64,000 nt of DNA from positions 1,178,001 to 1,242,000 of the forward strand of contig JBLDXI010000011.1 of NCBI GenBank assembly GCA_047495785.1. Direction: 5' to 3'. The translations under genes and the position numbers were made by a program. Under the pieces are notes generated by a model. It saw only the letters and a list, made by a program, of their open reading frames with translations. It had not been told where the DNA came from and made no database searches. Positions 20,271 to 54,969 of the stretch are shown here, one piece after another; the stretch's first letter is position 1; each line of letters starts with the position of its first letter. Source of the stretch: Lepidodermella squamata. Lineage: Eukaryota; Animalia; Gastrotricha.

Positions 20271-21537
20271 CTAGAACCTGCCTGCAGTCATTTCGCGGAA
20301 GAATGATGATACCTTAGAATAAATAGAATGGCTTTTGGAAATTAACAGCAGTCAAATCTACCTTTTCTCCGTCCCATTGAAATTCATCAGCGACCATAGT
20401 CTCAATATTTCGCATAATGACAATTCTGTCATTTGGCGATGGAAGTGATTGCGAACCTTTGTCTTGGTATTTACTCTCGAACCAAAAAGCTAGGCTTATT
20501 GTCGGCTGATCGCTTGCAGATTCAACATAATGCCACCAGCGAGGTGGAATGTAGAGAACATCGCCCGGGTTGATAATCGCTTCAAGCGCTTTCACGTTTG
20601 CGGCCAATGGGAATCTCGCGAAATCGGGATTCTCAAAATCTACCTGAGATTGGCGATCGCAAGGATGATAAACAGGATACGGGTAGAGATTCGCAAATTG
20701 TGACGGATCGAATAATAGAACACGCTTTGTGCCGCTTATCTGCGCAAGGAAATTGTTGAATTCATCATAGTGGGCAGGTGTTATGCTGGCTTTCTCTCCA
20801 ATGAAGAGAACATTAGCCGCCATATCCTTCCAAGTGTTACGTGTGCGCTGCTTCTCAACCCAATGCCAATCAAATTCAGCTATGTCTTGCTTCAATTTTG
20901 GCGAAGCGCCATTTTTGTAAGCTGCAACATCTTGAAGGTAAAGCCATTCCGGGTCAGTGTGACGGGTCTTCATCCGGTTGTAAAATTCGTCAAATGTCAC
21001 GTGAGCTTTTTCATGTGGTCGAACGAATGCACGCACGTTCTTAATTTTATCCTCGTTGTAATACATGAACGTCCTATTTGCGGATATACGCAACGAAAAC
21101 TTATCGCCGCTCAAGTTATCGCGCAAATATTCTAACGTCCATTTTTCTGCACTTCGAAAAATCTCCCCATCTGTTATCACCACTGGCGACTGACGTAAAA
21201 AAAAATAATAAAGAGCACATTATTGGAATAAATCTTACTTCATTTGATATCATGTAATTTGTGAACGTGTTTCTAACCGACAATCGTGGCACTGCTGTTG
21301 GTTTGAAATAATATTCGCGAAATGTCTTTTGTGTTGTGCAGCTGTTACGCTCTCCGGATTGACAGTCACCCTACTGGCAAAATATTAATTAACGCATGAA
21401 TTACCAGACTTACAGCCATTAGGTACCTCATTCGAACAGAACGCAGCTTCCAATGCCCTGTTACGTTGTGATGAAGAATATTCATCAAGCCTTTGCAACG
21501 AAAAAAGAACTAACGTGAATATCAGGATAGCAGTCAT
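20271..21537 (-). CDS. FIH/HIF1AN-like JmjC 2OG-Fe(II) oxygenase 1 with N-terminal signal peptide/anchor (exons 21537-21427, 21370-21239, 21189-20362, 20312-20271; alternative ATG at 21561)
   Basis: Motifs WTLEYL, TPAHYDE (HxD), GTKR, LYPYPVYHPCDRQSQVDF, PGDVLYIP, WWHYVES, MRNIE and terminal GRF are FIH-like. Exon 1 MTAILIFTLVLFSL joins in frame through 49-56 nt introns. Confidence 0.9.
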
Positions 21538-22188
21538 GTTCAAACTGCGATGAGTCCGCATTGTATTCGAGAAATCAACTCGATATGAAAGTAAAACGTA
21601 ACACTTATTCGATATACCTATCACATATGTTATATGCTACTAGAAAAGACGCGCGGTACACCGCGCGCCTCGTAACATGTACGCTGCAATGCTTCCATGC
21701 CAAGGAACTTAATAATAAAGCGGATTTGAAAATAACTTGAAACGAATCACATTAAAGCCAATGGATTGTTGATACTTGTAAAACACCGTTCAGATGACGG
21801 TTGTTAACTTATAAATGTCACTCACGTTCCCCATTCTTCATTTCACAACTCCAATCTGATATTCAATGATATACGACATACATCTAAGTTAAGTAAGTTA
21901 AGTTAACTCCATTCATAGATCTATAGATCCTTACTCGACGTACTCTGAATGTGATCTGAGTGAGATCTAATTTGAGATCAAAATATGTGACTTAGCAACC
22001 ATAGATCCGTACTCAATGTTGATGTTGTAGATTGACATAGATCTACATTGAGATTGAGTTAAATAGATCTACTTATTCTTGAGAATGAGGTAAGTTGAGG
22101 TTAAGCTCCAAGTTGATCTAACTTGAGATTAGACTTGTATGTTAGTTAGCATCTATATTTCCTTACTTCGGGATGTAATGTTCATATA

Positions 22189-23931
22189 CAGTGCGTTTCA
22201 GAATTATATGCCCAGTACTTCCTTGTTTGTGTTGTTTTTTCTTATGTTAAGAATATTCACCATATTCACGTTGCTGTTGCTATTATTATTATGAGGTCAG
22301 CAATACGCATTTACGCACAAAGTGAAGAATGGAGCGATATTTGCGATATGGTGGAAATTTACTCTCTTAACAAGCAAAAGCATTCATTTCAAAGGCGGAA
22401 ACCCCAATCTGAATAAGCAATTAATACCGTATTACCGCGCTTGATACGTCATGTCGATATGAATTTGCGTCAAAAGAAATCAATTCGAAAAAAAGTATCG
22501 CCATTTGACACTGTAGTCGTAATAACTGAAATTCGCCATTCCTATTACGCGCAAGGAATTATGCCGAAATTCAGCAGTCAACGGTACGCCGTGGCAGGAC
22601 TTCGCAAGCGACAGTAAGCGGCGCTAGCTTGGAGGAAGGAATCATTCCTCGAAGGGCGGCAGGGCGTCGCAGCTTATTTCAGCCTCAATTTTGCTATTAT
22701 AAAATCGTAAAGCGCGCTTGTAAGTTAGAAACTGAAGCAGTATTCCCCCATTCGTAATGAAACCTGCCGGCGGCCCGCCGCCTTGCAGCGCCAGTTCCGC
22801 TCCCCTCACAGCGCTAGTCCCGCTCTTTCTCGCGCGCACAATAGAATGACTACAACAAGTCACGATTTTATGGCGCCAAGCCGCACAAGAAGAGCTTGAA
22901 ATTGATTGATAAAATCATAAGTTTCTCATTTTGATCCGTTTCTGTGTGCCTGTATTTTTTCTGAATCTCCCAAAATTTTCCGAATTTTTCAAAAATTGTC
23001 TAAAGCTTCCTAAATTATTGATACCGAAAATGTGTTATCGACAAAGAAAGCCAGATCTACTCACATATTTGTTAATTTCTCGGGCGCGCTATTGATACCG
23101 CTATTATTGCAACCAATTGCTTCAGATTAGTGACAATAATTATCAAATGACCGCGCGCTCTCGCGCTGTTTATTTAATAACCAACTCGCTACAAGAGTGT
23201 CTTCATTCTTCCTCGGCGACGAAAAAACCCTTACCTCTCGACAGTTTCGTTGTATCTGAAATACAACGGAATTTCGTTATATCAAAAAAATACATCTACA
23301 TGTCGTATTAAGCGCCGTAATACGTTGTGTGGGTCATCTTAGGCCGGATTTTGCAGAGTCAAAGTCCAACTACGTGTTGCTCTGATGGTCGATATGATAG
23401 CATCAATGGGATCAATGGGGCTTGGCAGCACGCGATTCTATCAATTGATTAACATAGTGTGAAAAAAATCACACCCACCAACCCGACCAGCCCCACTATC
23501 GCGACCGACCCAGCAACAAGTAGTTGGACTTTGACACTGCATATCCAGACTAAGATGGTTTGACTAAGTTATTAAATATCTTATAAAATTTCGTTTTAAT
23601 TGGACATAGGAACTTTGATAGCTGAACAAGGAGGAAATCGCTTATGGTTCCTACATCTCCTCATTCACCTCTCAACATTTCAAGAACATTTAAATCTCAA
23701 GATAAAATATCGCAATAAAAATAAGTTGAATTTTCAAGCTCAATAATTGTCTCATTCTCATCACTTACTTAATCTTAATGAAGAAGAAAAAAACGTTAAT
23801 GAGCCCCCCGCTAAACATCGTTAAGAGATAGCAATTATGCCATTTTTATGAGGCTGCAATAAAAAAGCTATGTTCGTATTCCAATGCGCCCAAACATATA
23901 ACTGTTGGGCATATAATTTTGAAACGCACTG
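22189..23931. mobile_element. Non-autonomous Tc1/mariner-type element
   Basis: TA|CAGTGCGTTTCAGAATTATATGCCCA ... TGGGCATATAATTTTGAAACGCACTG|TA; no transposase ORF inside. Confidence 0.85.
23336..23557. mobile_element. MITE nested in the Tc1-like element
   Basis: catcttaggccggattttgcagagtcaaagtccaactac vs gtagttggactttgacactgcatatccagactaagatg; the same terminus recurs at 35291-35319. Confidence 0.75.
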
Positions 23932-26667
23932 TACTCAAGCATTAACAGATCTCAGCGAAAGATGTATCTAAAGCAAATGAATGTTCTATTGATCATGATT
24001 CACGAACATCTTTCAGTAAGACACCGAACATCAATAAGCGCAGAAGTTAACTGCACGCTGGTTAACTTGAAACTCGCGCGCCCCCGAAAACCGCGTCAAT
24101 TTGGTTTTCAACATGAATTATTTAAAAATTTGATTGTTAGTAATTTTAAAGTAAAATAAAAATTATAGAATTATTTTTATTTAAAATTAACGCGTATTTA
24201 AAAAGTTTATCCGAGTTCTCTTACGTTCTTTATGTTGTTAATTACTGTGTACATCGTCGCGAAAGGGGCCGCTCTCGAAATGATCTATCCAAAATGATCA
24301 GCTGAGCGAGAGCCATCATATCAAAAAAACGGCATTTTATTGGCTGATTCCCATTAGGCTCAGCGTTTTTTGAGAGAAGTAATAATAGAAATAATGCCAC
24401 TTGGCTGCGATACCATTTGAATAAAATCAAGGTTTGAATGGCCACGAAAGTAATAATGTTTATATCACCTGCAGTATTGAATAGATCATCTCCAGAGGAG
24501 TATAATGATGTAAATATTGGGCCCAATTCGGTTCTCCTTTTATATTGGAACAACAATAAAAACTTAGCGGCCCATTTCAAACGCAACGACATAGCGCATG
24601 CAGCCATACTTTACCGAAGCGAAGAAAATCTCACAATAAAGTAGTGTCGGAGATGGAAGGAAGTAGAGTGTTCCGGCGCTGCTAATTTTTGGCACGGGAG
24701 TGTATTCGATATAAAAGCTGGCAGAACTGTGTATTATTTAACAGAAGTTTATACAAAAACACTTAGGGCGATGAATCGATCTTGAAGATCGCGGTTTTTT
24801 TTGCTGTCATCATGGTCGAAGGAAAAAATTCCATTTCGGGACCTAGCCTAGCCGAGTTACCTGTAGGGAGCTGGAAGTTGTTTTGCATTTTACGGATGCA
24901 TTTTCAGCATATGCCTAGCCGAAAAGTTGAAGAAAACGCATCAGCTACAGCTGGCAGCTGGCTTTGCTGGCAACAGCTCTGGCAACAATTCAGAAAGTTA
25001 CCATCGATTAATACTAGTGGCAGAAAAGGACAACCAACAGATTAGACATTTATGTTAAAAAAAGAACCGGGGTTTTCGAATTTCGATTTTGACCATCCTC
25101 GGTAGGTGGGAGCCCTTTTAAACATTATTGAACTGAAAACCGGCTGAAAATGCGGTTGAAAACCGAGTTCACGCGAGGAAATTAGCACCAGGGACGCCAG
25201 GGACGCGTACCTGGTAGGTTTGAAGGTCAAGATAGTAACCGGAGCAATTAAACGCGGGTTTTTTCGGGGAATACTTATTTTTCATGTTGGTTATAAAGAT
25301 AATTTGCTCAAACAGTTCTCCCTCATTGAAAAGGAATTATCTGCTCTATCATGCGATTTTCTCCGTTTCGATAAAAAGTGTTGTGGCGCTAGAAAGTGTT
25401 TGACGTTGGAAAATAAAAGAAATTCCAGTGTGAAAGGAGGTGTCACCAGGAATAATACTAAATGTAATAGCTACTTTTTAATCTAAGAGCAAGAAAAACA
25501 TTGATTCGTCGATTCGCAAGATGAAAAAACAGGTAAGTTCGAAGGAGAGTTTAATTTAATAGATTAGCTGCAGTTCAGTGTCGGCCTGGTAGCCTTAGAC
25601 AGTTTAACGTGGGACACCACCTGGAGCCAAGTTCAGCTATTGAATCAACATGTCTTAATCAGCGGTCGTGTGGTGATGAAGCTTCAGGCGCCCTGTAGTA
25701 GACTTCAGACGTTTTCTCAATCGTGAATATGCAACATAGTCATGATTTTCTAGCATCAGTAGCTTCAACATACCGGGATGATGAGAAGAGGAATGAGGCT
25801 TAAAAATTGCAATTTTATGATTAAGCGAAAATCTCCAATGATTGACGTTAAATTTCGGAACGTTGTCGTGCAGGAGTCTCCCATCTTATCTCGTTCATGG
25901 AAGAACAGACACGACACTGGAAACCACTCGATTCAACAGCATGTCAGCTTGAAAAATACTGGAAATGAAAAATAATTAAATGAGCATCAACAACTATGTC
26001 AGCTGTAACTCTGCTATCGCGTTTTTAGTCTTGATTTTCCTTTCTATATCAGTCAGATCAGACAGACGTGTTAATAGACGGACGATTTCAGGACACGCGT
26101 TTAGAATCTTACTGACAAAACCGCATACGATGATAAAGAAACACGTTTTCCATCCAGGTAAATAACTTTTGTTTCCCAGTAATTATCATGTTTGCGTATA
26201 TATGGAAAGCTAAACAAAGAACTTCGCGTCAAACATTTCTTGCATCATTTCTGAGTGACGCTTATGTTTCCAAAGAAATAAAAGGTTATATATCGAGTAT
26301 ACTTAGCGTTTTGCGCAATTATGAGAATTCCAAAGTAGGCGAACAATGCAATCAAAATGAACAGTTAACAAGATGGACCAGCAGGATTTTTAGCTTTGCA
26401 ACGCTTGCCACGTCGCAATGAATCACTCGACTTGAACCGAATCGTTGAGAACAACGTAATGTGTCACGCCTGTTTTTTGAAATAATACAGTAGAAGGGTT
26501 GAAGTTTACGAACACACGAATCGGAGCAGGAGCTGAGTGGATTCTATGCTGTCATATCGGACAGGGGACAACAATTCAGAAAAAAGACAAAGAAGGCATA
26601 GTTTGATTTATTATTTACTAATGATCATTGAAATTCAACTGCTTCAAGCTGGTTCATTTGTTTTTTG

Positions 26668-28213
26668 TTAGTATTCCAATGGGAGATGAGCGTATCTGCC
26701 GATAGTCAGGTTACGGAAAAAATTGTTTATCTGAAATACATGATTAAAACAGCAATAGACGCTAATTCTCACAACATACCTTCGTTTCATCCCAATTAAA
26801 CGTGTGAGTTACGATCTCTTCCGCGCCACGCAACATTTTTACTTTCATGCGATCAGATAATGGATACTTGTTGTTATCAGCCAAGTTAGGGTTGTTGAAA
26901 GTAAACGTCACACTGATAGTAGGCTGATCAGCTCCTGACTCCACTTGATGCCACCAATACTCAGGAAGATATATCACCTCCCCCGGGCTGATAAATGCTT
27001 CATAAGCTTCAATCTTTGACAGCAAAGGAAATCTTTCGAAATCAGGATTCTCAAAGTCAACAGGAGACTGTCTGTCACATGGATGATACATCGGGAAGGC
27101 ATATATATTTCGGAATTGAGACGGTGGGAAGATCAAGAAGCGTTTTGTACCTTTCACCTGGGCGACGAATATTTCGAACTCGTCGTAGTGAGAAGGTGTA
27201 ATGCTGTCTTCATGAGCTATCAGAAGAAGATTCTGTTTGTACCCAGGCTCATAATTGTTGCGCTGTTGGTGCTTATTCACCCATTGCCAGTTAAATTTCT
27301 GGACATCTTCTTTGAGTTCTTCTAGGGTTTCGTTCACCAGTGGCTGCTGAATGTACATCCTTCTATCTGCCGTATGGCGTTTTTGAAATTCATCATAGAA
27401 TTCCTTCATTGTAATATGAATCCTCTCATAAGGCCGCTCGTAGTTGGCAACATTTTTCACATTTTTCTCAGCGAAATAAAGAAATCTATTGGTTTTCGAA
27501 ACAAATACTTGATACAGGCCCTTGTTGCTTTTGTCCCTGAGATATTCCAATGTCCAGTTCAGTGCATTATCAACGAGCTTGGTACCAGTTATGACTACCG
27601 GTTTCTGAAAATATACGGGACTTATAACAAGGACGACAATTTAAAATGTAGAGTTGTGGTAAAAATATATTTCATAATCGGGCAACACGTACAGGCATAA
27701 TAGACATAATCAGTATATCCTCATTACGAAAATTACGGCCTTGGAGTGATATTACGAAAAGTCCAAAAATCATTGAAGTTCCTCACGTTCTCAAGTCAAG
27801 AAAAAAATGAATCCCTAACAATGGTGCAGCGAATGACAATTGAAAAATCGTTTACCTGTTTCGATATCATTTCGTCAACTTGAGGATCGTCTGCTGACAT
27901 TTTCGGTATGCTTTTTGTTTTGAGGAAGTACTCGCGAAACTTTGGCCTATTGTCGTTCATTGTTGATGGTTCGACAGCTGGGGAGTTCGTCGGGCTCTGA
28001 AAAATACGATAATGGCCTTCTATAATGGCACTTGCCTGGAAATCCACGTCGTGGGTGTGAGACGCGATGCAAAGAACTTGACGATATTTTAATACGCAAA
28101 TGAAATGAAATCTCGCTCACCTGGGCATTTATTATTTGAATCAATCTGCAAAGGTCGCAAAGTGATATCAACAGGAAATAAAAGGCAAATTAATTATTTA
28201 CGCGACTATCCAT
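26668..28213 (-). CDS. FIH/HIF1AN-like JmjC oxygenase 2 (exons 28213-28121 [in-frame TAA at codon 8], 28035-27856, 27604-26780, 26730-26668); may instead start at ATG ~27960
   Basis: TPSHYDE, GTKR, HPCDRQSPVDF, WWHQVES and terminal GRY are intact; intron positions match gene 1; the 5' end is uncertain. Confidence 0.85.
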
Positions 28214-28674
28214 GCGATAACGAGGGAATTGACGTAAAGTGACATAGGTTAACTCCTAGAAATTTTTCAACTTGAGCAGGAAGTTTTTGAGATTCGCAAA
28301 ACTGCAAAAAAAAGAATTACAATGATGTGGCCATTTCAGCCAAGAGAAATGCGTACGCACAGCAAAAGCGGAGTGTTCAGGTTGCAGGTTTTTCCTCAAA
28401 GAAATATCACACGACAGACGACTCTGGTTGTGATGTCCGCTAACATAATTTAACTGCTTCAGCAACGACAAATAATAATACTTCAGATACTGTCGGAACT
28501 ATTTTTGTGGAAAATCAGGATGTTTATAAGCATATTTCAATTATTTTAAGATATGATTAAAATAGGAATACCAACTTTGTTCGGTAAGTCTGTTACAGAC
28601 TTCAAGACTTATGTTGCCCCGCGTTTTTGTAAAATTTCAATTCGACAAAGTGGAACTCGATTGAATATTAAATA

Positions 28675-29041
28675 TAACTTTGCATCCCGCACTAGTGCGG
28701 GACGTGCGGGATGACCTGCGGGATGCGTCCCACAGATGATCCCGCTGATGCTGCGGGATCGTCCCGCACCCGTCCCGCACCCGTCCCGCACTGTTATCCC
28801 GCACCATCCTGCACATCATCCCGCAGCTGCCATCCCGCACTTCTTCAGCAGGACCGTTGCGTGATCCCGCACCCTCCATAATCTCAGCTGCGGGACGCGG
28901 TCCGGCATAGACTGCGGGATAGGCGGGATGGACTGCGGGATGAGCTGCGGGATAGGCGGGATGGACTGCGGGATGAAATGCGGGATGCTGCGGGATGAGA
29001 ATGACGGTTCCTTCCCGCACCGAGTGCGGGATGCAAAGTTA
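28675..29041. mobile_element. MITE built of GCGGGAT/ATCCCGC repeats
   Basis: Perfect TIR taactttgcatcccgcact / agtgcgggatgcaaagtta; dense internal gcggga repeats in both orientations. Confidence 0.85.
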
Positions 29042-29135
29042 AAAGTATCCGAGGTGTTGTCACTAGGAAACCGGCAGCTGCAACTACAGTCCTCGACTGC
29101 TACGTTGAAAACAGGAACTCGATATTAGAACCTAT

Positions 29136-30244
29136 AGTACGCGGCATAATTATTTTTTCATGTTTTCAAGCTATAATTTATCGAAGATCGAAGCTGATAC
29201 GAAGACATCTTTTATGCAAAATAAAGCTTGCGTTTCAGGGAATTTGAACAAAAAACCGCCTCCTTTTATTATGCGTAGTTCAAGAGTGGCATGAAAATGA
29301 GTGTAAATATATCATGGTTAAAGGAATCATTTTTTGAGAAAGTTATTTTTTGATCATGTGCGCCTGAATTCGGTCGCCATTGACAGCAACGCACAGAAAG
29401 ACCCGCTCTCGAAATTGGTCGATGGTCGATTGGTGCAATACGTCTGGTTGTAGATTCATCTCTTAAGAAGGCGTTGATCAACGCAATCTTCGACTCGAAG
29501 ACTCCATCCTTGAGGTGCGAAGCCAGGCGCCTTAGCGCAGTACTGCTTGACAGATTCAGCTAGCGAGCAGAAACCGGCCTCTTTCGCTTCAAACTTCGTT
29601 TCACCACCAGCCTGACTTGCCTCTCCTTCTCTGGCGATCTCTTCGATTTTGAATGAGTTGCATTTTCGGTTTGATGTTCAAATTTTCAATCATCCAGAAA
29701 CTTGCTCACCCAGATTCGCAGAATCTGTGGGTCGGGCGAATCTTGCAAAATTCTTCAGTCTGTGTCGATATTCCCGTAAGGCTAGCGTGAGGGACCGACC
29801 ATTCTCAATATCTCAATGTAAAGAACAATCAAATCTTTACGTATCTGAGTGCTAAACTTAATTTCAACAACCGTGTCAAATAACCATGAATGGTTGTAAG
29901 GCAGTTCAGCAACGTCAGCATAGTCTTCTGCTGAAGAGTCTTTTGCTGAGTTAGTACAGCTGCTTAAGTGTCAGCTGCTGAAGTGTCTATTGCTTATGTG
30001 CTGTTTGCTGAAGTAGCGAATGCTGTAATAAGTTCTGCTGAACTGTCTTACAACCATATAAATAAATCGCACCAAATTTAATGCAACGCCGATTTTTTAA
30101 CGTCGATCATTAAAATTTGAGGTTCCCATAACAAAACGTACCTGAAACGCAAGCTTTACTTTGCAAAAAGATGGTCTTCGTATCAGCTTCGATCTTCGAT
30201 AAATTATAGCTTGAAAACTTCTAATACAAATTATGCCGCGTACT
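29136..30244. mobile_element. Non-autonomous TIR element (arms ~105 bp) with a nested MITE at 29892-30055
   Basis: agtacgcggcataat...gcgtttcagg vs cctgaaacgc...attatgccgcgtact; nested ggttgtaaggcagttcagca / tgctgaactgtcttacaacc. Confidence 0.8.
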
Positions 30245-30537
30245 TTTGTTCATGAGTTCTTCCTTCTGAGTTTGTTTTTGGCGTCAAAGTCAAAGTTCAG
30301 AGAGTTGCACCTTTGGGTTTTTCTTTTTTATTAGACGCAAATACTATCGAGTAGTCGATTAAGCGCGCCTTCGCACTTTCCGCTTCTCTACACAGCTATC
30401 AATTTCGCAACCAGCCGCTATTGCTCGCATAACCGGAACGACATGCGCACGAGTTACGAGAATTACGGGCCCTCCTTACATTGCGCAATCAGAGGGTAAA
30501 TGTGGATCTTTACGAAAACACAAACTCAGATTATAAT

Positions 30538-30878
30538 TTCTGGACCGCGCCCGCTATTGACAAAAAGATACTTCTGATTGTTTTGGCGGTTTTTATCCTC
30601 TGATAAAGTTCAGACAATTCTCTATCGAATAGATATAGGTTTCTCGCAAAAGGATTATGGGAAAATCTTACGCGCGACTTCAATTTCGTTCTCAGGCGAG
30701 AGAGCGCGCTCTCATCCTGTGCGCATATTTTGAGGTGCGCGTAAAACTTATTTTCATGATTTTTTCACGCGAGAACCCTATATCTCTTCGATAGCGAATT
30801 GTTAGAATTATTTTGTAGTGTGAAAACCGACGCGATGTTTGGAAGTAATTCTTTGAAATCCGTGCGCGCGGTCTAGAA
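30538..30878. repeat. Degenerate palindromic MITE-like element
   Basis: acaattctctatcgaatagatataggtttctcgc vs gcgagaaccctatatctcttcgatagcgaattgt; outer ttctggaccgcgc / gcgcggtctagaa. Confidence 0.65.
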
Positions 30879-32604
30879 CTTGTTAAAAATCAGGACTAAG
30901 AAAAGTTAACTGATGCGCGCGCTTGTGAGGAATACAAGTGCGCGCGCCTGATTCTCGTCCAGAAAGTCCTGATTGATAAATTGAGTGCACGCGCAACGTT
31001 ATCGCCACGCGCGAGCTGTAGTTGTTAGTTGTTACGCGAAATGTACATAACTTTTACCGAGATCGCCGTATCCTCGCGAATTCAAGATTTTCGCGAAAAT
31101 TACTGTTTTATTACGCAAATATCCAAGGATCGCCCTCGCGAATTTAAAATTTCGCGAAAATATAAAATGGTCATTTTTGGGCAATTCGCGAATTCAAGAT
31201 TACCGCGAAAATGAGTACGTATACAGTATTATCACATGGAATTTCGGCCAATACAAGGCATTAAATTTTCACTCACGAGGAAGGTAACCCTCATAAAACC
31301 AATTTCCTGCTAAAAAGCGAGCTCCAAAACCTCAACTCTTGGTATGAGAGGCGGGAAGTGGCAATTGCAAGGGGCTCGTTGAGGTTTCTAGCGACAATGC
31401 GGGCAGAAAAGTCCTCGGCCGGGAGCGAAAATAGTTTGAGAACAACTGCGTTTAAAAGAAGCTATTTACTTGCCACTCTTGGCCTTGAAACGAGGATAAA
31501 TCCGAGTCTACGACGCTAACGATTTGAGATACAGGATACGGTGTCTATTGTTATTCAAAAATGCTTTTTGCCTAATTTGCGCTTGGAATTTAATTGACGA
31601 ATAATGTATCATTGTTTCCACTATCCGGGTGAATGGCTTTTAATGAGAAAACTACGAGTCCTCTATACAGCAGAGATGAAGTCTCGCACGCTAGCGCGTA
31701 AACAACTCTGAATAAAAGCCTATGCCATTCTCAAGTTGATAAGCTTCGACCAACTAAGCACATTCGCTTTTTACATTGAAACGAGTCCGTATGTACGGAA
31801 GTTATGTCTGAACCGTTTTACGTACGATCATTTCGTGTAGATGCTGATATATTGAACAGACAAATATTGCGAAGGCAAACAGTTAACTGCAGTTACATTG
31901 TGAAATTGGAAAATCTCTGTGTCCATCTGCTTTATCTATCTTGCCTCACATGCTTCGTCATCCGCGGCGATTTTGAATTTTTCAAAATGCCAGTACATTT
32001 TTAGAAATGGAGCGTTCCGCTAAATCAGGTTCCGCCGAGTTCTAAAATCTCTGGCTTTGTTGACTTGGCGGATCAAATTTAGCGGACCAAATCTAGGTGT
32101 AGTACTTGAACTGCTTGAGTGAGGCTAAAGAGCTTAGGTTTGTATAGAAGGTCGTTGGATGGCCCTTTTCAGTAGGAATCGAGCAATCACATGACACACC
32201 TCCAATCTAGCCCGAAACACGGGTCCACTAAAAATTGGCCCGTTGAACTCTGCGACGTTAGCCACATAATGGAAAAGAAGTTCCGCGTAGCGAAGCATAA
32301 CATTGAGGGTAGAAAGGATGAGTTTTGCTCAGAGGTGCCCTAAATATCACTCCATTTTTACAAATGAACAATGAAATACGCAAATTGTTGTTAACAAAAG
32401 CGTTAATACGACGCGATGTATGCATACTCGTGGCGCGAATTATCCTCATTCTTGAGATAGAAAACTCCCCCCCCCCCTGAGCCCTCTTGAAAAAGTCAAG
32501 ATTTTTATTTCTGTCAGAATTCATTAAATTCAACAATATTTGTTACGATAATACGATTTGCGGCTAGCCTCAGTCATTCTCCAGCATATTAACCCAAGCA
32601 TAGT

Positions 32605-33886
32605 TCATTTGCTCATCGGCAGCGATACGTATCTGCCCACTGTGAGGTCACGAAAGAATGTTGTAAGCTGAAAATTAAATGCGAACAGGAAATGAGAGCG
32701 ATATTGGATGAATAGAACTCACCTCGTTTTCATTAAAATTGAATACCTGCGTGAATATCTTCTCAACGTTGCGCATCAGGTCAAAGTTGTTTGGTTCAGT
32801 TGACAGAACTTTCTGACTTTCGGCCTTAATTTTCAAATGGTACTTAATACTAATAGACGGATTGTTGGAGCTCGATTCAATTTGGTGCCACCAGCGAGAT
32901 GGAATGAGGATAATATCGCCAGGATTTAGGACAGCTTCTGAAGCAATGACGCCTGCGGCTGACGGAAACTTTGTGAAGTCGGGTTTCTCCAGGTCAACTT
33001 GGGAGTACTTATCACATGGATGATAATAAGGATAGGAATATAAATTGCCGAACTGCGACGGCTCGAATAGTATTACTCGGCTTGTGCCGCTCACTTGCAA
33101 CAAGATGAGATACTCCTCCTCGTAACCAGTTACAAGCTTGCTTTTCTCTTCGCTGACCATCAAAAAGCTTGAATCTATTTCTACCTGATGGCTAGGGTCG
33201 ACATGTTTTGCTATCCATTCGGAGAACATTGGCTTAACAGCGTTTTGCAGGGCTGGCAGTTTTGCAGTGTTTTGCAGGAGAAAAATCGTATTTGAATCGA
33301 GATGTCTTTCCTCGAATGCATCGTGAAACTGAGCGAAACTCATTTCTACAGCCTTAACCGAACTTTTAAAATTCTTGACGTGCTTCTTCTTTGTTTCGCT
33401 GCATTCTAAGAAGCGCTTGTTCTCGGAAATTCTAATATCAAAGATTTCGTCTCCATATTCCTCGAGCATTTCGTCTAGGGTGAAATCGTGAGCATCTAAA
33501 CCGTTATCAGAAATCACAATAGGTTCCTGCTTTACATGGAATTTTACAATCGTTAAACAGTTGACCCAGAGACTAACGTTATTCAGTTTGAGCTTTTCCT
33601 CGGAAAGTTTGATTCTCGGAATTGGCTGTGTTTGGAAGTAGTATTGCTGAAATAGTTTGGATTTTGAGCAGCCATCTCCAGCAGTCGCATCACAGTAGTC
33701 CTGGAAACAAAGATGGATCATCTAGATCAGAGAGGCCAAATTTCAATATTTTTCTTACTTCTGTGCTGCTACAGGCTGCTCTGCTGAGCCTGAAGTTAAT
33801 TATTTTACGATTAGGCTGAATGTAGCTTTATCAACTCACACATGAGCAATGAAGATGAGAAAATGAAAAGATGACATAGGCTGCAT
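32605..33886 (-). CDS. FIH/HIF1AN-like JmjC paralog 3, predicted catalytically dead, with signal peptide (exons 33886-33840, 33789-33759, 33700-33578, 33526-32723, 32667-32605)
   Basis: LYSYPYYHPCDKYSQVD, PGDIILIP, WWHQIES, MRNVE and GRY are retained, but TPAHYDE is replaced by VTGYEE and GTKR by GTSR. The spliced N-terminus reads MQPMSSFHFLIFIAHVLSRAAC; all introns are 50-58 nt. Confidence 0.87.
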
Positions 33887-34320
33887 GTGATTCCTTAGGG
33901 TCGAACACGATCTCAAATAAGTTTCTGAAATATTGGAATTTGTTTCTATAGATAAGTTAAGTTGACTAATGAGTAAGAGAAATTAGAACAAATACGAAGC
34001 TGGAGAGAAGGTACAAATAAAAACTGCAAAGTAATTTAAGCTCTTTTCTAGTTTTATTTTAACCAAATGTCTTCATGATTTCAATTCCGGAACAAAAAAC
34101 TTGTGAACTGTCTATGAATTTCATGTTGATGACACAGCATTTGGCATTTGGGTCTGACGTAACGGGACATTTTGGACATGTCAACTACGACCCACATAAC
34201 ATGGACATAAAAAGTGTGCATCGCACCGGCGGAATTAGCAAAGACCCTAATAAATTTAAAACTTAGCAGGCCTTCTACTTTGGAAAATTAAGCGACAAGT
34301 TAGAAACGTTAGACTATCTA

Positions 34321-34701
34321 ATGAATTTAGCCCATTTTCTCTTCGCGGTTTTGGCTTGGGCAGTTACGATGGCTGTTCAACCGGGCGATGACATTGTGGC
34401 GTTCACAAGGGCACTGGATCTTTTCAAATCATTTGACTACGCAGCCGCCGTTGATGGATTTTTTGAAGCGCAACAAGTTGTCGATCAACTTAAAGAAGCT
34501 GGCTATAAGCCATGGCAGCGGGAGGAAGATATTGTGTTATACTTGGCACAGTCGATCGTTCATTCCACCAAAGACTATGCGAAAGCTGTTAAAATTATAG
34601 AGGACTATACAGGATTTCATACGTCCTATTTAGACCTTTTAGCTCGCTTCGCTAAACAGTATAGTTATGACGCCATCAAGGCGAATAAAACCGAATTGTA
34701 A
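34321..34701 (+). CDS. Small helical (TPR-like) protein with signal peptide and C-terminal KTEL ER-retrieval-like motif, 126 aa
   Basis: MNLAHFLFAVLAWAVTMA leader; TPR-like patterns (ALDLFKSFDYAAAVDGF, YLAQSIVHSTKDYAKAVKIIE); KTEL-stop immediately followed by AATAAA. Confidence 0.8.
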   Translation: MNLAHFLFAVLAWAVTMAVQPGDDIVAFTRALDLFKSFDYAAAVDGFFEAQQVVDQLKEAGYKPWQREEDIVLYLAQSIVHSTKDYAKAVKIIEDYTGFHTSYLDLLARFAKQYSYDAIKANKTEL

Positions 34702-36111: not shown

Positions 36112-37124
36112 TTAGAATTTTCGATTCAGCATTTTTGACTGCCAGGCAACCATGCCCGATTCGGACTGGAACCAGATGGTTAAATTCGAGCGCAACTGCT
36201 GGCCGTGGTCGAAACCCTTTTTCTCGGTGACGCGAATGTTCTCTGGGACGAAATTCGGTAGCGCGCCTTCTTTCTCGATCTCCTGCCACGTGTCCCACGC
36301 CTCGCGATCGCCGATGTTGTAGTTAGAAACCTCGGCCATTGCGAAATTATGAAGCGTACAGATGGCCAGCACGGCGTCTTCTGCCATTTCTGGGCTCAAC
36401 TCCATCACTTTCCGAAGTAGGCGGAATCTAGCTGATGCAATGCCGAATGCGTTTTCGACGACACGCCGACCGCGAGATAAACGATAATTAAAAGTTTGCT
36501 TATTAGCCGGCAAATTTCCGGATGTTTGTCCGGGATAGGGTGAAAGGAAGTTCCAGTCTAGCCCGAACGCCGCATCGCCAACAAAATAATGGTTCGCCTT
36601 CATATTGCCACCAGGTAGAGGAATAGACTCCGTTGGCGTGGTGTTGCTGCAATATTCCAGCAGGCCGCTATTCTTGAATACCCCGCCGTCACTGAAACGG
36701 CCGTGGGCACCGACATCGACCAGGCAGAAGCGATACTTGGCGTCAACCACCGCCATTAGCACAATCGAGTAAGTTCCCTAAAAAAATTAAAATTAAAAAT
36801 TAAAAAATCCAGAAAAATTGAAATTAAAAATTTACAAATTAATTTTGAGAATATTTTTTCAAATAAAATAAAAATAAATAAAAATAAAATAAATAAATAA
36901 ATAAATAAATAAATAACTAAATAAAAATTGCTACCAACCTTATAATTATAGTATTCGCTCCCAGATTTTGCCGGACGAACGATGACGCAGTGTTTTCCGT
37001 CTACCGCGCCGCAGCAGAACGGCAAATTCCAGTACTGGCCAAACTCGGCGGCGTTCTCTCGCCACGTTTCAGCGGTGGGAGTCGGCATGTAAATTGGCAT
37101 TAGGGCGGTTGCACAGCCGTACAC
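36112..37124 (-). pseudogene. Harbinger DDE transposase (HARBI1/DDE_Tnp_4-like), 5'-truncated; exons 37124-36939 and 36777-36112
   Basis: GAVDGKH, YYNYK|GTYSIVLMAVVDA, GRFSDGGVF, VGDAAF, FNYRLSRGRRVVENAFG; the N-terminal region is missing. Confidence 0.92.
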
Positions 37125-40977: not shown

Positions 40978-42779
40978 TTATCCAGTCGTTATTAAGGTCA
41001 AATCTGTCAGATCTTTATCTTGAGTCCAGTTCAACCTCGCCACCATAATTGGGTTCCAAGCATGTGGACATTTCTCATTTAAACGCAAGCGTTCAAGATG
41101 CGAAGGCAACGCTAATGGCCGCTTCGATAGATCATCGAATTCAAACAAAAATTCGTAGCTATTCACTTCACTCCACCTCGAGTAGTTCGCGCAGAATTCG
41201 GGCTTTTGTTCGAGCTCAGTCAGCCCGTAGCAGTAGCCTTTTCTCAGAGCGTGGACTAAAATTCCATCAGTTACTTTACCGGGTGCAAAATATGTCCAGT
41301 GTATCGATAAATGGGGTCGTAGTCTCGATATTATTTTTCTGCTGATTCCAGCTTCAGATAAATTTGCCACCTGGCCGTATGGTGCTGGACCCGGCCAATT
41401 GGGCTCGACCTCGTTGACAATCCAGTAGTAGTCATCGCGAAAGTGCCGCCAAAGTATGGTACACATCATGTTGTACTCGGAGTAGAGGCCGTATCGGCCG
41501 AATGCAGCGAAAGCTTCGTCGAAGGTCTTTGTATTTCTCTGCTTTCTGATGACTTCGCGGATGAAATGCAAGTGGGCAACCTTGACGATGACCGGGAAGA
41601 AGCACATGCAATTGAAGACTTCTGAAATGGATTAACTTTTTTAGAAAAAGCATCTTTTGAACTTTGAATTTGCGTGGCCACATTGAACTATTGAAACTTG
41701 ATGAAACAGTACAATTTCGATTGGGGAAATCCTGATCAAAAATCAAAACCATCATACCGAATAAGGGGTATCGTACCCCCTATAGTTCTTCAGGCCAAAA
41801 TGGAAATACCCCCGTAAAATCACAGGTTCTTTGGTCGTAAAATTGGGGCCCGAAAATACCCCCTAGCTTGAGGAACCTACTCCTCACAAACCTCGGGGTT
41901 CTTCAGGAAAGCTTGACAGAAAACAATCATTATTTCATAATTCATAATTACTATTGTGACGTTCTGATCTGGAACCCTCGCCCTCATGCCGTAGAACCGC
42001 TCAACCGAATTAAAGGTGGTTCCATGCAACCATACCCTTGCAATATGTAAAAGGATCGTCCCTCTAACGTAGCAATCTTTGGAACCTAAATTTGGTCTAT
42101 AATGCCTTAATACAGCAAAGGCATCAACACTCACCTTTGAATCCAGTATAAGCGTAAGTGTTGCCTGGAACTCGGTACCAATTACCCAGCCAGCCTTCTC
42201 TCGGTCGTCCGTATAACGGTCTCAGTACAGGTTTGCCATCAATGAAAGATCTCGGCCTGTAATCCGAGTGACAAACGCTGTATCTGTATCAACAAATCCA
42301 ACATAAGTCGCATTAGTCCAGTTGTCAGCCCACATTTTCAACCACTGGGACTTGTCCCAACCCGGGCAAGGAAACACGCGTTGAGTAAGGACTGTCCTAA
42401 CCTGAATCCCATCGAATGACGCCATGGCTCGTTTTTCAACCCGATCAGCAAAATGCCGGACGTTAGGATCTTCAATATCGGTGACAATGGATAATTTCAA
42501 CTCCTGATTCGTAGGCCAGAACATGGCTAGAGTTGGAATGAACCAGGTTGATGTCTCCATTTCGCCGACTTCATTCGAAGGCGTAGTCAGCATCAATTCA
42601 ATATCGGGCCATTTCTCATTGCAATTGTCATTATTACCAAACGAAAATTTGTCGATGACGAAATCACGGAAATGTGACGAATGGTTATAGCCTTGTCTTA
42701 CAAGGTTGAATAACAAATATATTGAGCTAAAAACCGCGAGCAGTATTTTTAGTGGTTTGAGGTAAACAGTCAGGGGCAT
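40978..42779 (-). CDS. Type II membrane GT-A-like (DxD) glycosyltransferase-like protein A; exons 42779-42135 and 41621-40978; 1-nt frameshift at ~42246
   Basis: N-terminal TM; GWDKSQWLKMWADNWTNATYVGFVDTD; NCMCFFPVI; YSEYNMMC. Colinear with paralog 61270-63144 with the same phase-1 intron; adding one T restores DLFIDGKPV. Confidence 0.78.
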
Positions 42780-43861: not shown

Positions 43862-46364
43862 CCTGTATCGTTACATGCGCCGATTTTTTTTGCGCATCAT
43901 AGATTGCGCAATGTAACATGCGCATTACCCATTTCCTATTTTTTAAATTGAGCATTTCGCAAATGCGGAATACGAAGTTGCGCAAATTTTTTTGTTTGCG
44001 AATTTGCTCAATTCTAAAATACGGAAATGGGTAATGCGCATCGTTACATTGCGCAATCTATGATGCGCAAAAAAAATCGAGCGCATGTAACGATAGGATG
44101 ATTAGTAATCCGTTTTTATTGTTAATTCGTTCTTCGTTTATAGTAAAAATGAGCGTGAAAAATGTTTAGATTGTTCCGATTTGAAGGTTAAAGAAAAAAG
44201 TTTAAAGAAACATGTTGATCACAATTTGAATTGAAAGCGAAAGGTGTTCAAGTTCTGACGATGAGATGGACTGGGTTGGGCTCAGTCGTCCAGATCGGCG
44301 AGTAGGCGAGCGCAGTAGCGGACGTAGTCTGCTTGATTGACGTTGCCAGCAACGAAGCGGTCGTGCAGGATCTCCACCCTGCGTTGCAAGCGCTCATACT
44401 TGCGATTCAGACGCACCGTGTCGGCTGCAGACGCAACTTGCTCCCGGCGAGCTCGAGCCGCCGCTTCCTCCTTGCCGAATTGCTCGACAACCTCCCAGAT
44501 GTTGGGGTGAGGTTTTCCCAGGCACTTGTTCAATCGATAGTGCCATCCTACAAAACAGAATTGAAAGTGAGAAACAACTACTCGCGTCACTCTTACCTTC
44601 AGCGTGGTTGTTGGTCCTGACGCTGCGCTCCCAAACATTCCAGTGAGCTGGAGGATTGTCACGCAGCCATGTTTGTTCGACATAGGCGAAATAGCGGTCG
44701 AGGACAGCGGGCGCATCGTTTCGGATGGTCTCGATATGCGCGGCGACCAGGTTGACAGGAAGGAAGGCGGTTGCAGTCGTCTCCCGAACGATCGTGCGGA
44801 CGTTGTTGGCGTTCTCGCGGTAGGCGACCTGATGGAGAAAGTGATTTGGATCAAATGTAAAAAAATGAAAATTTACATGATTACATACCTTCAATCCCAT
44901 TTCCACGGTCACAAATCGGTAGTGACATTGGGTGAAATGAAAGAAACACCCGCAAAAGTCAAACGGCTGTCCGTTGCCGAACTCATCCTGAAGAGCAGGG
45001 ATCAAACCGGTTTCAAAGTCTGCCGTGGCAGATTGCGGCTGGAATCGTAGATCGCGATCGATAGCAACGTCTTTCAGTGACCTGAAGAACCTTCCGTAAA
45101 GGCGGCGTGTCTTGCGAGTGAGTAGGCCGTAAACCAGCGGCTGGATGAGATCAGGCTCCGTTTCAGCGTGCAACGTGAAGATCTGCATGAACTGAGGCGG
45201 AGAAGACTTGAACGTTCCGTCCATATAGACGCGTTCCGCGTTGGTGAGCAAGTTGAAGTCTTCGGGTGAAGCGAACGCAGCAAAACAGCCATCATTGGTC
45301 ACCTCGGCTGACAGTAAGAACGGCCTATCGATCGAAGTTCTTATGAATCTGTCGTAAAAAGAAAAATATAAGAATTCCATTGGATAATCTAATAAAATCG
45401 CTTACCTTCGAAAACGTTCATCATCCTCGTTTTCGATCAGCATTTCGACGAACTGCTCGGCGTTGTCGGGGTTTGCCGGTAAATGAAGGCGTCGCTGGCG
45501 GTACAACGCTCCAGAGGCAGATGCGAAACCCGGTAGCAGCATAGCTGCTTCTGGGTCCACATCATTCAACTAGAAAGATGGTGAAGTTAGTTATTTTTTA
45601 CAACGACGAAATTTGGCAATACCTCTGTCAGGTAGCGTTCGTAAATTCGGGGTGCAGGTTCCCGGGTAGTGCCAGCCGCCATTTTCATGAGACTTTGAGC
45701 ATGTTCCTTCGCGAGCCGCTGCTCATTGGGTGGGTGGCTGTGATCTCGAGCCAGCGTCCACAGACCATCGTGTTCCACAACCCGACCTTGACAATGGCTG
45801 CGCAAGCAACGGCCGTTTTCGCGGTACCCATAGCCGTTTACCATGATTTTCGGGCGCCCTGAAAGGAAAGAAAATTAAACAATAATTCGAAACAGGATCC
45901 AGGTTGAGAGAACCTTTAGTTGTAGTTGACATTACTGCCTCCCCAACATCGGCATCCATCTCTTCATCTTCCATAGCATCCATTTCCATTTCATCAGCTT
46001 CCGCCATTGTTGAATGTAAAATGAGTGAGATATAGTTATAGAAATTGATGTTATCGATGAATCTTCAAGCCTTTTCGACCAGCTTAAATACTGGAATCCA
46101 CTGCCAATTAAGATAGTCGTGTCAAATTTATTGGTGCGCAATTGTTTCTCCGCTCAACTATAATTTGCGAAACTGGGTTATGCGTAATTGCTGTAATGCG
46201 CAATGAACGATGCGCATCATAATAATTGCGTAACTGGATAAGCCCATATTCCAAAATTATAAAAAACTAAAGCTGAAAAAACTAAATCCCATCTGAGGAA
46301 TGCGCTAATACCTGAGCGCAAATACCCCATGCGCAAAAAAAATCGGCGCATGTTACATACGACC
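43862..46364. mobile_element. Mutator-like (MULE) transposon, apparently autonomous
   Basis: 9-bp direct repeat CATAATTAT at 43853-43861 and 46365-46373; TIR core acatgcgccgattttttttgcgcat; transposase gene inside. Confidence 0.88.
44282..46007 (-). CDS. FLYWCH-MULE transposase, six exons
   Basis: KG|RPKIMVNGYGY...C..C...HSH (FLYWCH-like), YMDGTFK, VYGLL, ADFETGL, GCFFHFTQ, RTNNHAE|GWH, HPNIW; five ~50-60 nt introns join all pieces in frame. Confidence 0.9.
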
Positions 46365-54430: not shown

Positions 54431-54969
54431 TGCACCTATTGCCCATCGTCACCCCTAGAAACGTACAAATGAGTACATATTAAACCACCATCATATGTGA
54501 CCACGTTTTATGCGGGGAAAATGTCCTTCCCTCCTCCTATACGGTAATTCGAACCGTCATTTTTTATTCAAAATACGAGTTTTTTCCTCAATGCGTCATG
54601 ATCAATAAAAAATCAGAAGATTTATTGGAAAAAATCGTTGAAAGCATCAAGTCAAGATATGTAGAATAAATATAATATGTAACTGATACGCGGCATGAGA
54701 AGCGCAATTATAATCAAGATGCAAAATGTTAGTTCAACCCCAGTTTTTTCTGTTTCCGGTGCAATGTTATGCGCGCAATCCGCGATATGCCACTTGTCTG
54801 TAGAAAATTCTCCGAATTATTGATATAAGCTGAAATCGTCCTAATTATATATTGTAAACGAAGGTAAGAAGACAGAACATTTCATTTGAGAGCATTATTT
54901 TCCCACACTGACTTTTAAAGCGCCCTCAGTTTCTCTGCTTACAACTGACCGCTTTTTTTGACTGAATCG

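What the first reader, a model, noticed from the sequence alone, without database searches (positions are those of the whole stretch)
20271..33886. Tandem trio of FIH-like JmjC oxygenases that appear retargeted to the secretory pathway
Seen: short upstream exons missed by the ORF track splice in frame and give hydrophobic leaders (gene 1 MTAILIFTLVLFSL; gene 3 MSSFHFLIFIAHVLSRAAC; gene 2 FAFYFLLISLC behind a stop). Genes 1 and 3 share a 3-Cys segment across the same intron (CSNE|GDC...C; CSSTE|DYC...C). Known: canonical FIH/HIF1AN is a usually single-copy cytosolic Asn hydroxylase with no signal peptide; lumenal 2OG oxygenases are normally P4H, P3H, PLOD, ASPH or JMJD8. Inference: a lineage-specific ER-lumenal or secreted FIH-type hydroxylase family.
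Basis: partly seen in the sequence, partly recalled or inferred. Interest (0 to 1): 0.85.

Follow-up and report, generated by a model that had tools for sequence, protein, structure and literature searches.

The report
Three FIH-like genes, two with signal peptides
A small invertebrate (probably a gastrotrich) has tripled its FIH oxygen-sensor gene, and two copies carry a spliced leader that looks like a secretion signal; one of these keeps an intact active site and the other has lost it, while the third copy has no leader, which matters because FIH-type enzymes are only known to work in the cytosol.

Summary
Three minus-strand genes, G1, G2 and G3, are FIH/HIF1AN-type JmjC proteins.

- **G3:** The hydrophobic leader (MQPMSSFHFLIFIAHVLSRA|AC...) lies on the mRNA, and only its Met1 or Met4 can start the conserved FIH fold.
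- **G1:** it has a homologous leader, the same 3-Cys segment and the same phase-0 intron. I could not test its RNA, and its first intron has weak splice signals.
- **G2:** it has no leader. Its transcript runs unspliced through the supposed acceptor, and the first AUG gives a canonical-looking cytosolic start (MNDNRPKFREY).

The trio is a lineage-specific clade inside canonical spiralian FIH, ordered (G2,(G1,G3)).
- G1 keeps the iron triad and most 2-oxoglutarate and substrate residues.
- G3 has lost His199, Lys214, Thr196, Tyr145, Asn205, Gln239 and Trp296, so it is a pseudoenzyme.

The database hits also show an older, separate clade of FIH-like paralogues in anthozoans and homoscleromorph sponges. 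These have signal-peptide-like starts and Cys-rich N-termini. The gastrotrich case is therefore a convergent second instance. I found no paper describing either.

Localisation and activity are untested.

The parts
21427..21561 (-). G1 exon 1 (CDS). It has ATGs at 21561 and 21537. It encodes the hydrophobic leader MRTHRSLNMTAILIFTLVLFSLQ... and ends ...AAFCSNE. The donor is GAG|GTACCT.
   Evidence: hydropathy 2.95. No RNA test.
21239..21370 (-). G1 exon 2: GDCQSGERNSC...FREYYFKPTAVPRL...MISNE. The acceptor is the TAG of a CAG-TAG tandem; use of the CAG would put TAG in frame.
20362..21189 (-). G1 exon 3: FIH-type JmjC/Cupin_8 core with His199, Asp201, His279, Lys214, Thr196, Tyr145, Asn205, Gln239 and Trp296 kept
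20271..20312 (-). G1 last exon (VSSFFREMTAGRF, stop TAG 20273-20271), homologous to the last exons of G2 and G3. An AATAAA lies at about 20187.
27856..27996 (-). G2 exon 1. A strong lone acceptor (tatttttcag|) puts the exon start at 27996. ATG 27960 gives MNDNRPKFREY...MISKQ, with no hydrophobic leader.
   Evidence: The RNA contig is contiguous from 27970 to 28073 and has no upstream ATG.
26780..27604 (-). G2 exon 2: the FIH core. The iron triad is kept; Asn205 is Ile, Asn294 is Thr and Trp296 is Thr.
26668..26730 (-). G2 last exon (INNFFRNLTIGRYAHLPLEY, then stop)
28121..28189 (-). It lies behind a TAA, has no ATG, and no listed RNA contig lies on it. It is most likely upstream non-coding sequence.
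33840..33926 (-). G3 exon 1. The mRNA contig reaches 33926. A lone acceptor ttcag| puts the exon start at 33924. ATGs lie at 33886 and 33877. It encodes the leader MQPMSSFHFLIFIAHV.
33759..33789 (-). G3 31-nt micro-exon (LSRAACSSTE), with a likely signal-peptidase site after SRA
   Evidence: joints in the RNA contig
33578..33700 (-). G3 exon 3: DYCDATAGDGC...YYFQTQPIPRI...KLNN
32723..33526 (-). G3 exon 4: FIH-like core with the iron and 2OG ligands lost (GYEEE in place of AHYDE; Lys214 is Ser)
32487..32667 (-). G3 last exon (LTTFFRDLTVGRYVSLPMSK, stop at about 32605) plus the 3'UTR. The poly(A) tail is added at 32487 and an AATAAA lies at 32509.
34321..34701 (+). Head-to-head neighbour of G3: a 126-aa ORF with a hydrophobic start and a C-terminal KTEL. 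It is not part of the trio but is a possible partner.

Best explanation
A canonical FIH (HIF1AN) gene was duplicated twice in this lineage, giving three tandem genes.

- **G2** keeps the ancestral layout. Its mRNA begins at a lone acceptor 35 nt before MNDNRPKF, it has no leader, and it keeps the iron triad. It is most likely the cytosolic FIH of this animal, with an altered substrate pocket.
- **The common ancestor of G1 and G3** gained an upstream coding exon. That exon supplies a cleavable N-terminal signal peptide and the first Cys of a three-cysteine segment; the other two Cys lie at the start of the next exon. Both proteins should therefore enter the ER co-translationally.
- **G1** keeps the 2-His-1-carboxylate iron site and most 2OG and substrate residues. 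It would act as an Fe(II)/2OG hydroxylase of Asn, Asp or His side chains on lumenal or secreted proteins.
- **G3** is expressed but has lost the iron and 2OG ligands, so it is a pseudoenzyme. It keeps the C-terminal helices that dimerise FIH. The likeliest role is as a non-catalytic partner or substrate-binding subunit (of G1, or by itself), possibly disulphide-linked through the odd cysteine.

**Shown:** gene structures; the G3 mRNA; the residue states; the phylogeny.
**Inferred:** signal-peptide function; G1 expression and splicing; enzymatic activity; any G1-G3 pairing.
For: - FIH is the best match for all three genes.
- The G3 exon joins, leader and poly(A) tail sit on one RNA contig.
- In G3 the only Met codons upstream of the conserved YYFQTQPIPRI strand are Met1 and Met4. 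The leader must therefore be translated if the fold is to be made. The same logic holds for G1, with Met1 or Met9.
- The G1 and G3 leaders are homologous (ALEAAFCSNE|GDC against LSRAACSSTE|DYC) and share an intron position and phase.
- Hydropathy is 2.95 for G1 and 2.24 for G3. It is 1.56 or less for 118 of the 120 FIH homologues and 2.31 for the neighbour's signal-peptide-like start.
- G3 has a textbook small-x-small site (S-R-A|A) after an 11-residue hydrophobic core.
- Residue table: G1 keeps H199, D201, H279, K214, T196, Y145, N205, Q239 and W296; G3 loses nearly all of them.
- Trees give (G2,(G1,G3)) inside spiralian FIH.
- The G2 RNA contig has no upstream ATG, and its acceptor is unspliced in cis.
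- G1 and G3 lack the non-conserved cysteines of canonical FIH but gained three near the N-terminus.
Against: - No signal-peptide predictor was available, so the call rests on hydropathy and the -3/-1 rule.
- G1's hydrophobic core is followed by QRLDEY, with no good small-x-small site nearby.
- G1's first intron has a weak donor (GTACCT) and a CAG-TAG tandem acceptor. Use of the CAG would give an in-frame stop.
- G1 RNA was not examined.
- N-glycosylation sequons are not enriched: G1 has 4 including one in the leader, G3 has 0, and the canonical median is 2.5. The cnidarian/sponge clade has up to 8.
- Neither G1 nor G3 has a KDEL-type retention signal.
- The genome trans-splices a leader onto its mRNAs (earlier notes). 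A downstream acceptor could therefore bypass G1's leader.
Confidence: 0.6

Rival explanations
1. G1 and G3 are type II (signal-anchor) membrane proteins. The hydrophobic segment is not cleaved and tethers the FIH-like domain to the lumenal face of the ER or Golgi.
For: G1 has Arg2 and Arg5 before the hydrophobic run, acidic residues after it, and no good cleavage site. Other genes in this window start with hydrophobic N-terminal segments, and an earlier unchecked note reads this genome's DUF268 proteins as type II membrane proteins (s1-379846).
Against: The hydrophobic cores are only about 11-14 residues, too short for a typical membrane span. G3 has a textbook S-R-A|A cleavage site.
Confidence: 0.15
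2. Only the dead copy, G3, is really made with a leader. G1 is a decaying or unexpressed duplicate. The locus then gives a secreted FIH-fold binding protein but no lumenal hydroxylase.
For: G1 has the weakest splice signals: GTACCT..CAGTAG with a possible in-frame stop, and GTAGAT..TCTAAG. No RNA evidence was obtained for it. G3 is the one shown on a transcript.
Against: G1 has an intact 378-codon ORF over four exons. It has the shortest branch of the trio (0.61, against 1.19 and 2.38) and keeps the catalytic residues. Both point to purifying selection. A poly(A) signal follows its stop codon.
Confidence: 0.15
3. The hydrophobic N-termini are not targeting signals, and all three proteins are cytosolic FIH paralogues with lineage-specific N-terminal extensions.
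For: Sequons are not enriched, there is no retention signal, and localisation is untested.
Against: An 11-14-residue hydrophobic run at the extreme N-terminus, followed by a polar Cys-bearing segment, is the standard signal-peptide layout. It is absent from 118 of 120 FIH homologues. The two of the 120 that reach 2.0 are an Exaiptasia protein that falls in the separate clade of FIH-like proteins with signal-peptide-like starts and many sequons, and a salamander protein with a long N-terminal extension that I did not examine further.
Confidence: 0.1

Closest known systems
FIH / HIF1AN (factor inhibiting HIF), the cytosolic Fe(II)/2OG asparaginyl hydroxylase
   Same: Same fold and family. Identity is 38-44% for G1 and G2 and 30-32% for G3. 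The trio nests within spiralian FIH in the tree. The HxD...H triad and Lys214 are kept in G1 and G2, and the C-terminal dimerisation helices are kept in all three. G2 also keeps the short cytosolic N-terminus.
   Different: There are three fast-evolving copies instead of one. G1 and G3 have an added signal-peptide-like leader plus a 3-Cys segment. G3 lacks the catalytic residues. All three have lost Asn294, and G2 has also lost Asn205 and Trp296.
FIH-like paralogues with signal-peptide-like starts in Anthozoa and homoscleromorph sponges (for example Exaiptasia P0090, Oculina P0125, Dendronephthya P0127, Corticium P0129, Oscarella P0131). They are annotated automatically as 'HIF-1-alpha inhibitor(-like)', and I found no paper on them.
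   Same: An FIH-type core preceded by a hydrophobic N-terminus and a Cys-bearing N-terminal extension. Each species with one also has a canonical leaderless FIH.
   Different: They form a separate, old clade (support 100/99) outside canonical FIH. Joining G1 and G3 to it is rejected (AU test, p = 0.023). The extensions are longer (60-130 residues), several members carry 5-8 N-glycosylation sequons, and the sponge members have coiled-coil-like stretches. The gastrotrich leaders are a convergent gain.
JMJD8, the ER-lumenal JmjC-only protein (PMC5684140)
   Same: A small JmjC protein with an N-terminal signal peptide that forms dimers or oligomers.
   Different: By the paper's alignment JMJD8 has HxH rather than HxD at the iron site, and its tree puts JMJD8 in one cluster with JMJD7, HSPBAP1, JMJD5, TYW5 and HIF1AN. 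No JMJD8 sequence was compared here; the trio matches FIH 45 or more orders of magnitude better than JMJD5 or JMJD7 for G1 and G2 (22 for G3) and nests inside the FIH clade.
ASPH (aspartyl/asparaginyl beta-hydroxylase), the known ER-lumenal Asp/Asn hydroxylase of EGF domains
   Same: The chemistry and compartment proposed for G1: Fe(II)/2OG-dependent side-chain hydroxylation in the secretory pathway.
   Different: ASPH belongs to a different 2OG-oxygenase family (from established knowledge). No homology appeared in any search here.

Membership tests
FIH / HIF1AN subfamily of JmjC hydroxylases | Cupin_8/JmjC core that matches FIH better than other JmjC-only proteins and nests within the FIH clade | tested here: met
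   - Pfam Cupin_8 match: 4e-43, 8e-35 and 3e-24.
- Solved-structure search: FIH at 1.5e-70, 1.9e-68 and 1.2e-34, against JMJD5 at 1e-24 or weaker.
- Trees place the trio inside canonical FIH.
FIH / HIF1AN subfamily of JmjC hydroxylases | Fe(II) facial triad His199, Asp201 and His279 | tested here: inconclusive
   Met in G1 and G2. Not met in G3, where His199 is Gly or Tyr and Asp201 is Glu, with only His279 kept. The result therefore differs by gene.
FIH / HIF1AN subfamily of JmjC hydroxylases | 2OG-binding residues Lys214, Thr196, Tyr145, Asn205 and Asn294 | tested here: inconclusive
   G1 keeps 4 of 5 (Asn294 is Ala). G2 keeps 3 of 5 (Asn205 is Ile, Asn294 is Thr). G3 keeps 0 of 5.
FIH / HIF1AN subfamily of JmjC hydroxylases | C-terminal helices that form the obligate homodimer | tested here: met
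   All three align through MRNxE... and the final FFRxxTxGR(Y/F) exon. Dimer formation itself was not tested.
FIH / HIF1AN subfamily of JmjC hydroxylases | Cytosolic protein without a targeting signal | tested here: not met
   G1 and G3 have hydrophobic N-terminal leaders (hydropathy 2.95 and 2.24), and G3's is on the mRNA. G2 does meet this feature.
FIH / HIF1AN subfamily of JmjC hydroxylases | [quoted passage not shown] | not testable with these tools
   This needs an enzyme assay.
Cleavable N-terminal signal peptide (secretory pathway) | The three standard parts of a signal peptide: a short N-terminal stretch, a 7-15-residue hydrophobic core, and a polar stretch with small residues at -3 and -1 | tested here: inconclusive
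   G3 fits fully: MQPMSS / FHFLIFIAHVL / S-R-A|A. G1 has the core (TAILIFTLVLFSL) and a basic N-terminal stretch but no clear cleavage site. No SignalP-type predictor was available.
JMJD8 (ER-lumenal JmjC) | JMJD8-type sequence with HxH at the iron site (as described in PMC5684140) | tested here: not met
   G1 and G2 have HxD, and the trio nests inside FIH. The JMJD8 description comes from PMC5684140. No JMJD8 sequence was compared directly.
Cnidarian/sponge FIH-like clade with signal-peptide-like starts | Membership of the 100/99-supported clade that holds P0090, P0125, P0127, P0129 and P0131 | tested here: not met
   The trio sits in the other (canonical) clade, which has 95/96 support. Forcing G1 and G3 into the signal-peptide clade costs 33 log-likelihood units (AU test p = 0.023).

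The most novel reading that the evidence does not exclude
FIH-type hydroxylases have been recruited to the secretory pathway at least twice in animals: once anciently (anthozoans and sponges) and once in this gastrotrich lineage. Here the lumenal system would be an active subunit (G1) paired with an expressed pseudoenzyme subunit (G3) through the conserved FIH dimer helices and an N-terminal cysteine. It might be retained in the ER by the divergently transcribed KTEL-ended neighbour. That would be a previously unrecognised route to Asn, Asp or His hydroxylation of extracellular or cuticle proteins.
Probability: 0.25. Interest if true: 0.75.

Novelty: new variant of a known kind. Interest (0 to 1): 0.55.

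Why it matters
FIH is treated as a single-copy cytosolic and nuclear oxygen sensor that hydroxylates HIF-alpha and ankyrin repeats. A survey of FIH in non-vertebrates (PMC6488082) mentions no paralogues or signal peptides.

If G1 works in the ER lumen or outside the cell, FIH-type chemistry would reach secreted proteins. Substrate searches for FIH-like enzymes would then have to include the secretome.

The locus also shows all three fates of a duplicate side by side: conserved, retargeted, and retargeted and inactivated. That makes it a compact case of neofunctionalisation by gain of a leader exon.

The unpublished anthozoan and sponge clade found on the way suggests the phenomenon is wider than this one genome. 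That clade may be easier to test, because Exaiptasia and Nematostella can be worked with in the laboratory.

Tried and rejected
- **Homologue search with the G3 core:** nothing at E 1e-5 or better. G3 is too diverged to share 5-residue words, so no G3 orthologue and no copy of its own transcript protein was found.
- **Homologue search with the G1 core:** no hit above 50% identity. The best, P0166, is a metagenome fragment that is sister to the trio. Its contigs end before the 5' exon, so I cannot say whether the sister gene has a leader.
- **Extending P0166:** an exact-pattern scan and a related-loci scan of metagenome contigs found no close relative.
- **P0097 as a separate canonical FIH of this genome:** rejected. 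It is an intronless gene from an unrelated run.
- **P0001, the top hit by score:** it is a sturgeon protein with a partly duplicated core, not a relative of interest.
- **Rejected acceptors for G1's last exon** at 20281 and 20277. I chose the 49-nt intron, which yields VSSFFREMTAGRF, homologous to the last exons of G2 and G3.
- **Rejected alternative donors in G1 intron 1** (GTAAGT and GTAATT further downstream). With the only acceptor that keeps the FIH frame open, they give stops.
- **Sequon enrichment as a mark of secretory adaptation:** it gave no support.
- **RNA evidence for G1:** not obtained. The caps were one run search and one read-laying run of at most 6,000 letters, and I spent them on G3 and the 5' end of G2.


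Full report
**What is there**

The stretch 20271-33926 holds three minus-strand genes, about 6 kb apart. Their long exons all match Pfam Cupin_8 and JmjC_2. Human FIH is the best solved structure for each: G1 1.5e-70, G2 1.9e-68, G3 1.2e-34. JMJD5 is next at 1e-12 to 1e-24, and JMJD7 and TYW5 are weaker. Earlier notes of this scan take the genome for a gastrotrich, probably Lepidodermella, that trans-splices a leader onto its mRNAs. I did not test that identification. The tree does place the genes among spiralian FIHs.

**Gene models**

The run search found one run, X1, that behaves as RNA. A 1246-nt contig carries a poly(A) tail at 32487 and four GT..AG joins.

- **G3** has these exons: 33926-33840, 33789-33759 (31 nt), 33700-33578, 33526-32723 and 32667-32487. 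It gives a 355-residue protein that starts MQPMSSFHFLIFIAHV|LSRAACSSTE|DYCDATAGDGC.
  - The contig ends two bases into a lone ttcag acceptor at 33925. That fits trans-splicing there. Either way, both ATGs (33886 and 33877) are on the mRNA.
- **G1**, by homology and open frames, has exons 21561-21427, 21370-21239, 21189-20362 and 20312-20271, giving 378 residues with introns of 56, 49 and 49 nt.
- **G2** has exons 27960-27856, 27604-26780 and 26730-26668, giving 330 residues.
- All three share the intron before (S/K/E)P(V/I)V(I) and the intron before the last small exon (FFRxxTxGR[Y/F]).

**The leaders**

- G1 and G3 begin with hydrophobic runs. The best 11-residue Kyte-Doolittle mean is 2.95 for G1 and 2.24 for G3. 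It is 0.45 for G2, 1.56 or less for 118 of 120 other FIH homologues, and 2.31 for the signal-peptide-like start of the neighbouring KTEL gene.
- G3 has the full signal-peptide layout, with S-R-A|A as the cleavage site. G1 has a basic start (Arg2, Arg5) and a 13-14-residue core, but no good cleavage site.
- The segments after the cores are homologous: ALEAAFCSNE|GDC...C against LSRAACSSTE|DYC...C. They have a phase-0 intron at the same place and three cysteines each (G1 Cys42, 48, 56; G3 Cys22, 29, 37).
- In both proteins no Met lies between the leader and the conserved N-terminal strand (FREYYFKP.. in G1, QQYYFQTQPIPRI in G3). The FIH fold can therefore only be translated together with the leader.

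**G2 has no leader**

- The X1 contig runs unspliced from 27970 to 28073, across the acceptor at 27997/27996. It contains no upstream ATG.
- That acceptor (tatttttcag|, 35 nt before the ATG) looks like one of the lone acceptors that other agents report before most start codons in this trans-splicing genome.
- G2's start, MNDNRPKFREY, resembles the canonical start of an unnamed FIH homologue from a JGI contig (P0002, MANSGKTPKFRKY).

**Active sites** (numbering as in human FIH, checked on bird FIH)

| Gene | Kept | Changed |
|---|---|---|
| G1 | His199, Asp201, His279, Thr196, Lys214, Tyr145, Asn205, Arg238, Gln239, Trp296 | Asn294 to Ala |
| G2 | His199, Asp201, His279, Lys214, Thr196, Tyr145 | Asn205 to Ile, Asn294 to Thr, Trp296 to Thr |
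| G3 | His279 | His199 to Gly or Tyr, Asp201 to Glu, Thr196 to Leu, Lys214 to Ser, Tyr145 to Phe, Asn205 to Leu, Gln239 to Tyr, Trp296 to His |

G3 is therefore a pseudoenzyme, yet it is clearly transcribed.

**Origin**

- In two maximum-likelihood trees the trio is monophyletic (99/93 and 96/91), ordered (G2,(G1,G3)) with 93/79-81 support, and nested among spiralian canonical FIHs.
- Its sister is P0166, a metagenome fragment 50% identical to G1 with a canonical-looking core.
- All three branches are long (0.6-2.4, against a median of 0.47). The simplest reading is that the G1/G3 ancestor gained the leader exon after it split from a G2-like gene. Loss in G2 cannot be excluded, because the sister gene's 5' end is missing.

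**An unexpected precedent**

- One of the first 120 hits, Exaiptasia P0090, had a signal-peptide-like start.
- Searching with it revealed a family in Anthozoa (Exaiptasia, Oculina, Nematostella, Dendronephthya, Paramuricea and many coral transcripts) and in the sponges Corticium and Oscarella.
- Its members have hydrophobic N-termini, Cys-bearing extensions of 60-130 residues and up to 8 N-glycosylation sequons. Exaiptasia, Nematostella and Oscarella also have a canonical leaderless FIH among the hits; for the other species this was not checked.
- These proteins form a 100/99-supported clade outside canonical FIH. Forcing G1 and G3 into it is rejected (log-likelihood difference 33, AU test p = 0.023). 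The gastrotrich leaders are thus an independent gain.

**Literature**

A survey of FIH in non-vertebrates never mentions a signal peptide, secretion or paralogues (PMC6488082). The JMJD8 paper calls JMJD8 the first JmjC protein found in the ER lumen (PMC5684140). Full-text searches found no paper on secreted FIH-type proteins.

**Caveats**

- No signal-peptide predictor was available.
- G1 RNA was not examined.
- G1's first intron has a weak donor (GTACCT) and a CAG-TAG tandem acceptor, whose first AG would put a stop in frame.
- Sequons are not enriched in G1 or G3.
- Neither G1 nor G3 has a retention signal.
- Contig depth cannot rank expression.

**Verdict**

This is a new variant of a known kind, of moderate interest. 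The interest is raised by the convergent older clade and lowered by the untested localisation and by the fact that only one of the three genes is a candidate lumenal enzyme.

Noticed in passing
Proteins P0090, P0121-P0134, P0169, P0235, P0244 (database hits, not in the window): An apparently undescribed, old clade of FIH-like paralogues in anthozoans and homoscleromorph sponges. Members have signal-peptide-like N-termini, Cys-bearing extensions and many N-glycosylation sequons. The clade is separate from canonical FIH (support 100/99).
   Followed up: partly
window 34321-34701 (+): A 126-aa ORF set head-to-head with G3, with about 395 bp between the 5' ends. It has a hydrophobic signal-peptide-like start and a C-terminal KTEL. 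It has no Pfam family, and protein-language-model features resemble small TPR-like helical proteins.
   Followed up: partly
window 27970-28262: The X1 RNA contig for the 5' end of G2 joins minus-strand 28073 directly to plus-strand 28202-28262. This is an inverted junction. It could be a roughly 189-bp inversion between the RNA source and the assembly, or a fold-back or assembly artefact. The contig's first 52 letters lie on nothing in the stretch.
   Followed up: no
window 28560-29160 and 29960-31560: The intergenic stretches between G2 and G3 have 5- to 20-fold excess contig depth in the DNA-like run X2, with many variant joints. They are repeated elements. The first is a low-complexity HPA(V/Y)-type repeat.
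   Followed up: no
window 1746-2155 and 8142-8551: Two identical copies, in opposite orientation, of a 134-aa ORF with a hydrophobic start and a Cys/Thr/Ser-rich body. This is a large inverted duplication about 6 kb apart.
   Followed up: no
window 36112-36762 (-), 44394-45380 (-): Transposase remnants: a DDE_Tnp_4 (Harbinger/PIF-type) ORF and a MULE-domain ORF.
   Followed up: partly
window 40978-63144: A run of genes that look like secretory-pathway glyco-enzymes: DUF268 (46627-47832), a weak STELLO-like glycosyltransferase match just under Pfam's cut-off (54958-55698), and two pairs of paralogous ORFs without a Pfam family (40978-41607 with 62536-63144, and 42222-42779 with 61270-61944). 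One ORF of each pair (42222-42779 and 61270-61944) starts with a hydrophobic stretch that could be a signal anchor.
   Followed up: partly
L003 1-400 (metagenome contig that encodes P0166): The closest relative of the trio is a eukaryotic gene in two ENA metagenome assemblies. It has roughly 58-nt introns, one at the same (..MK|QPVV) position, and a further upstream coding exon that is cut off by the contig end. Its own N-terminus is therefore unknown.
   Followed up: partly
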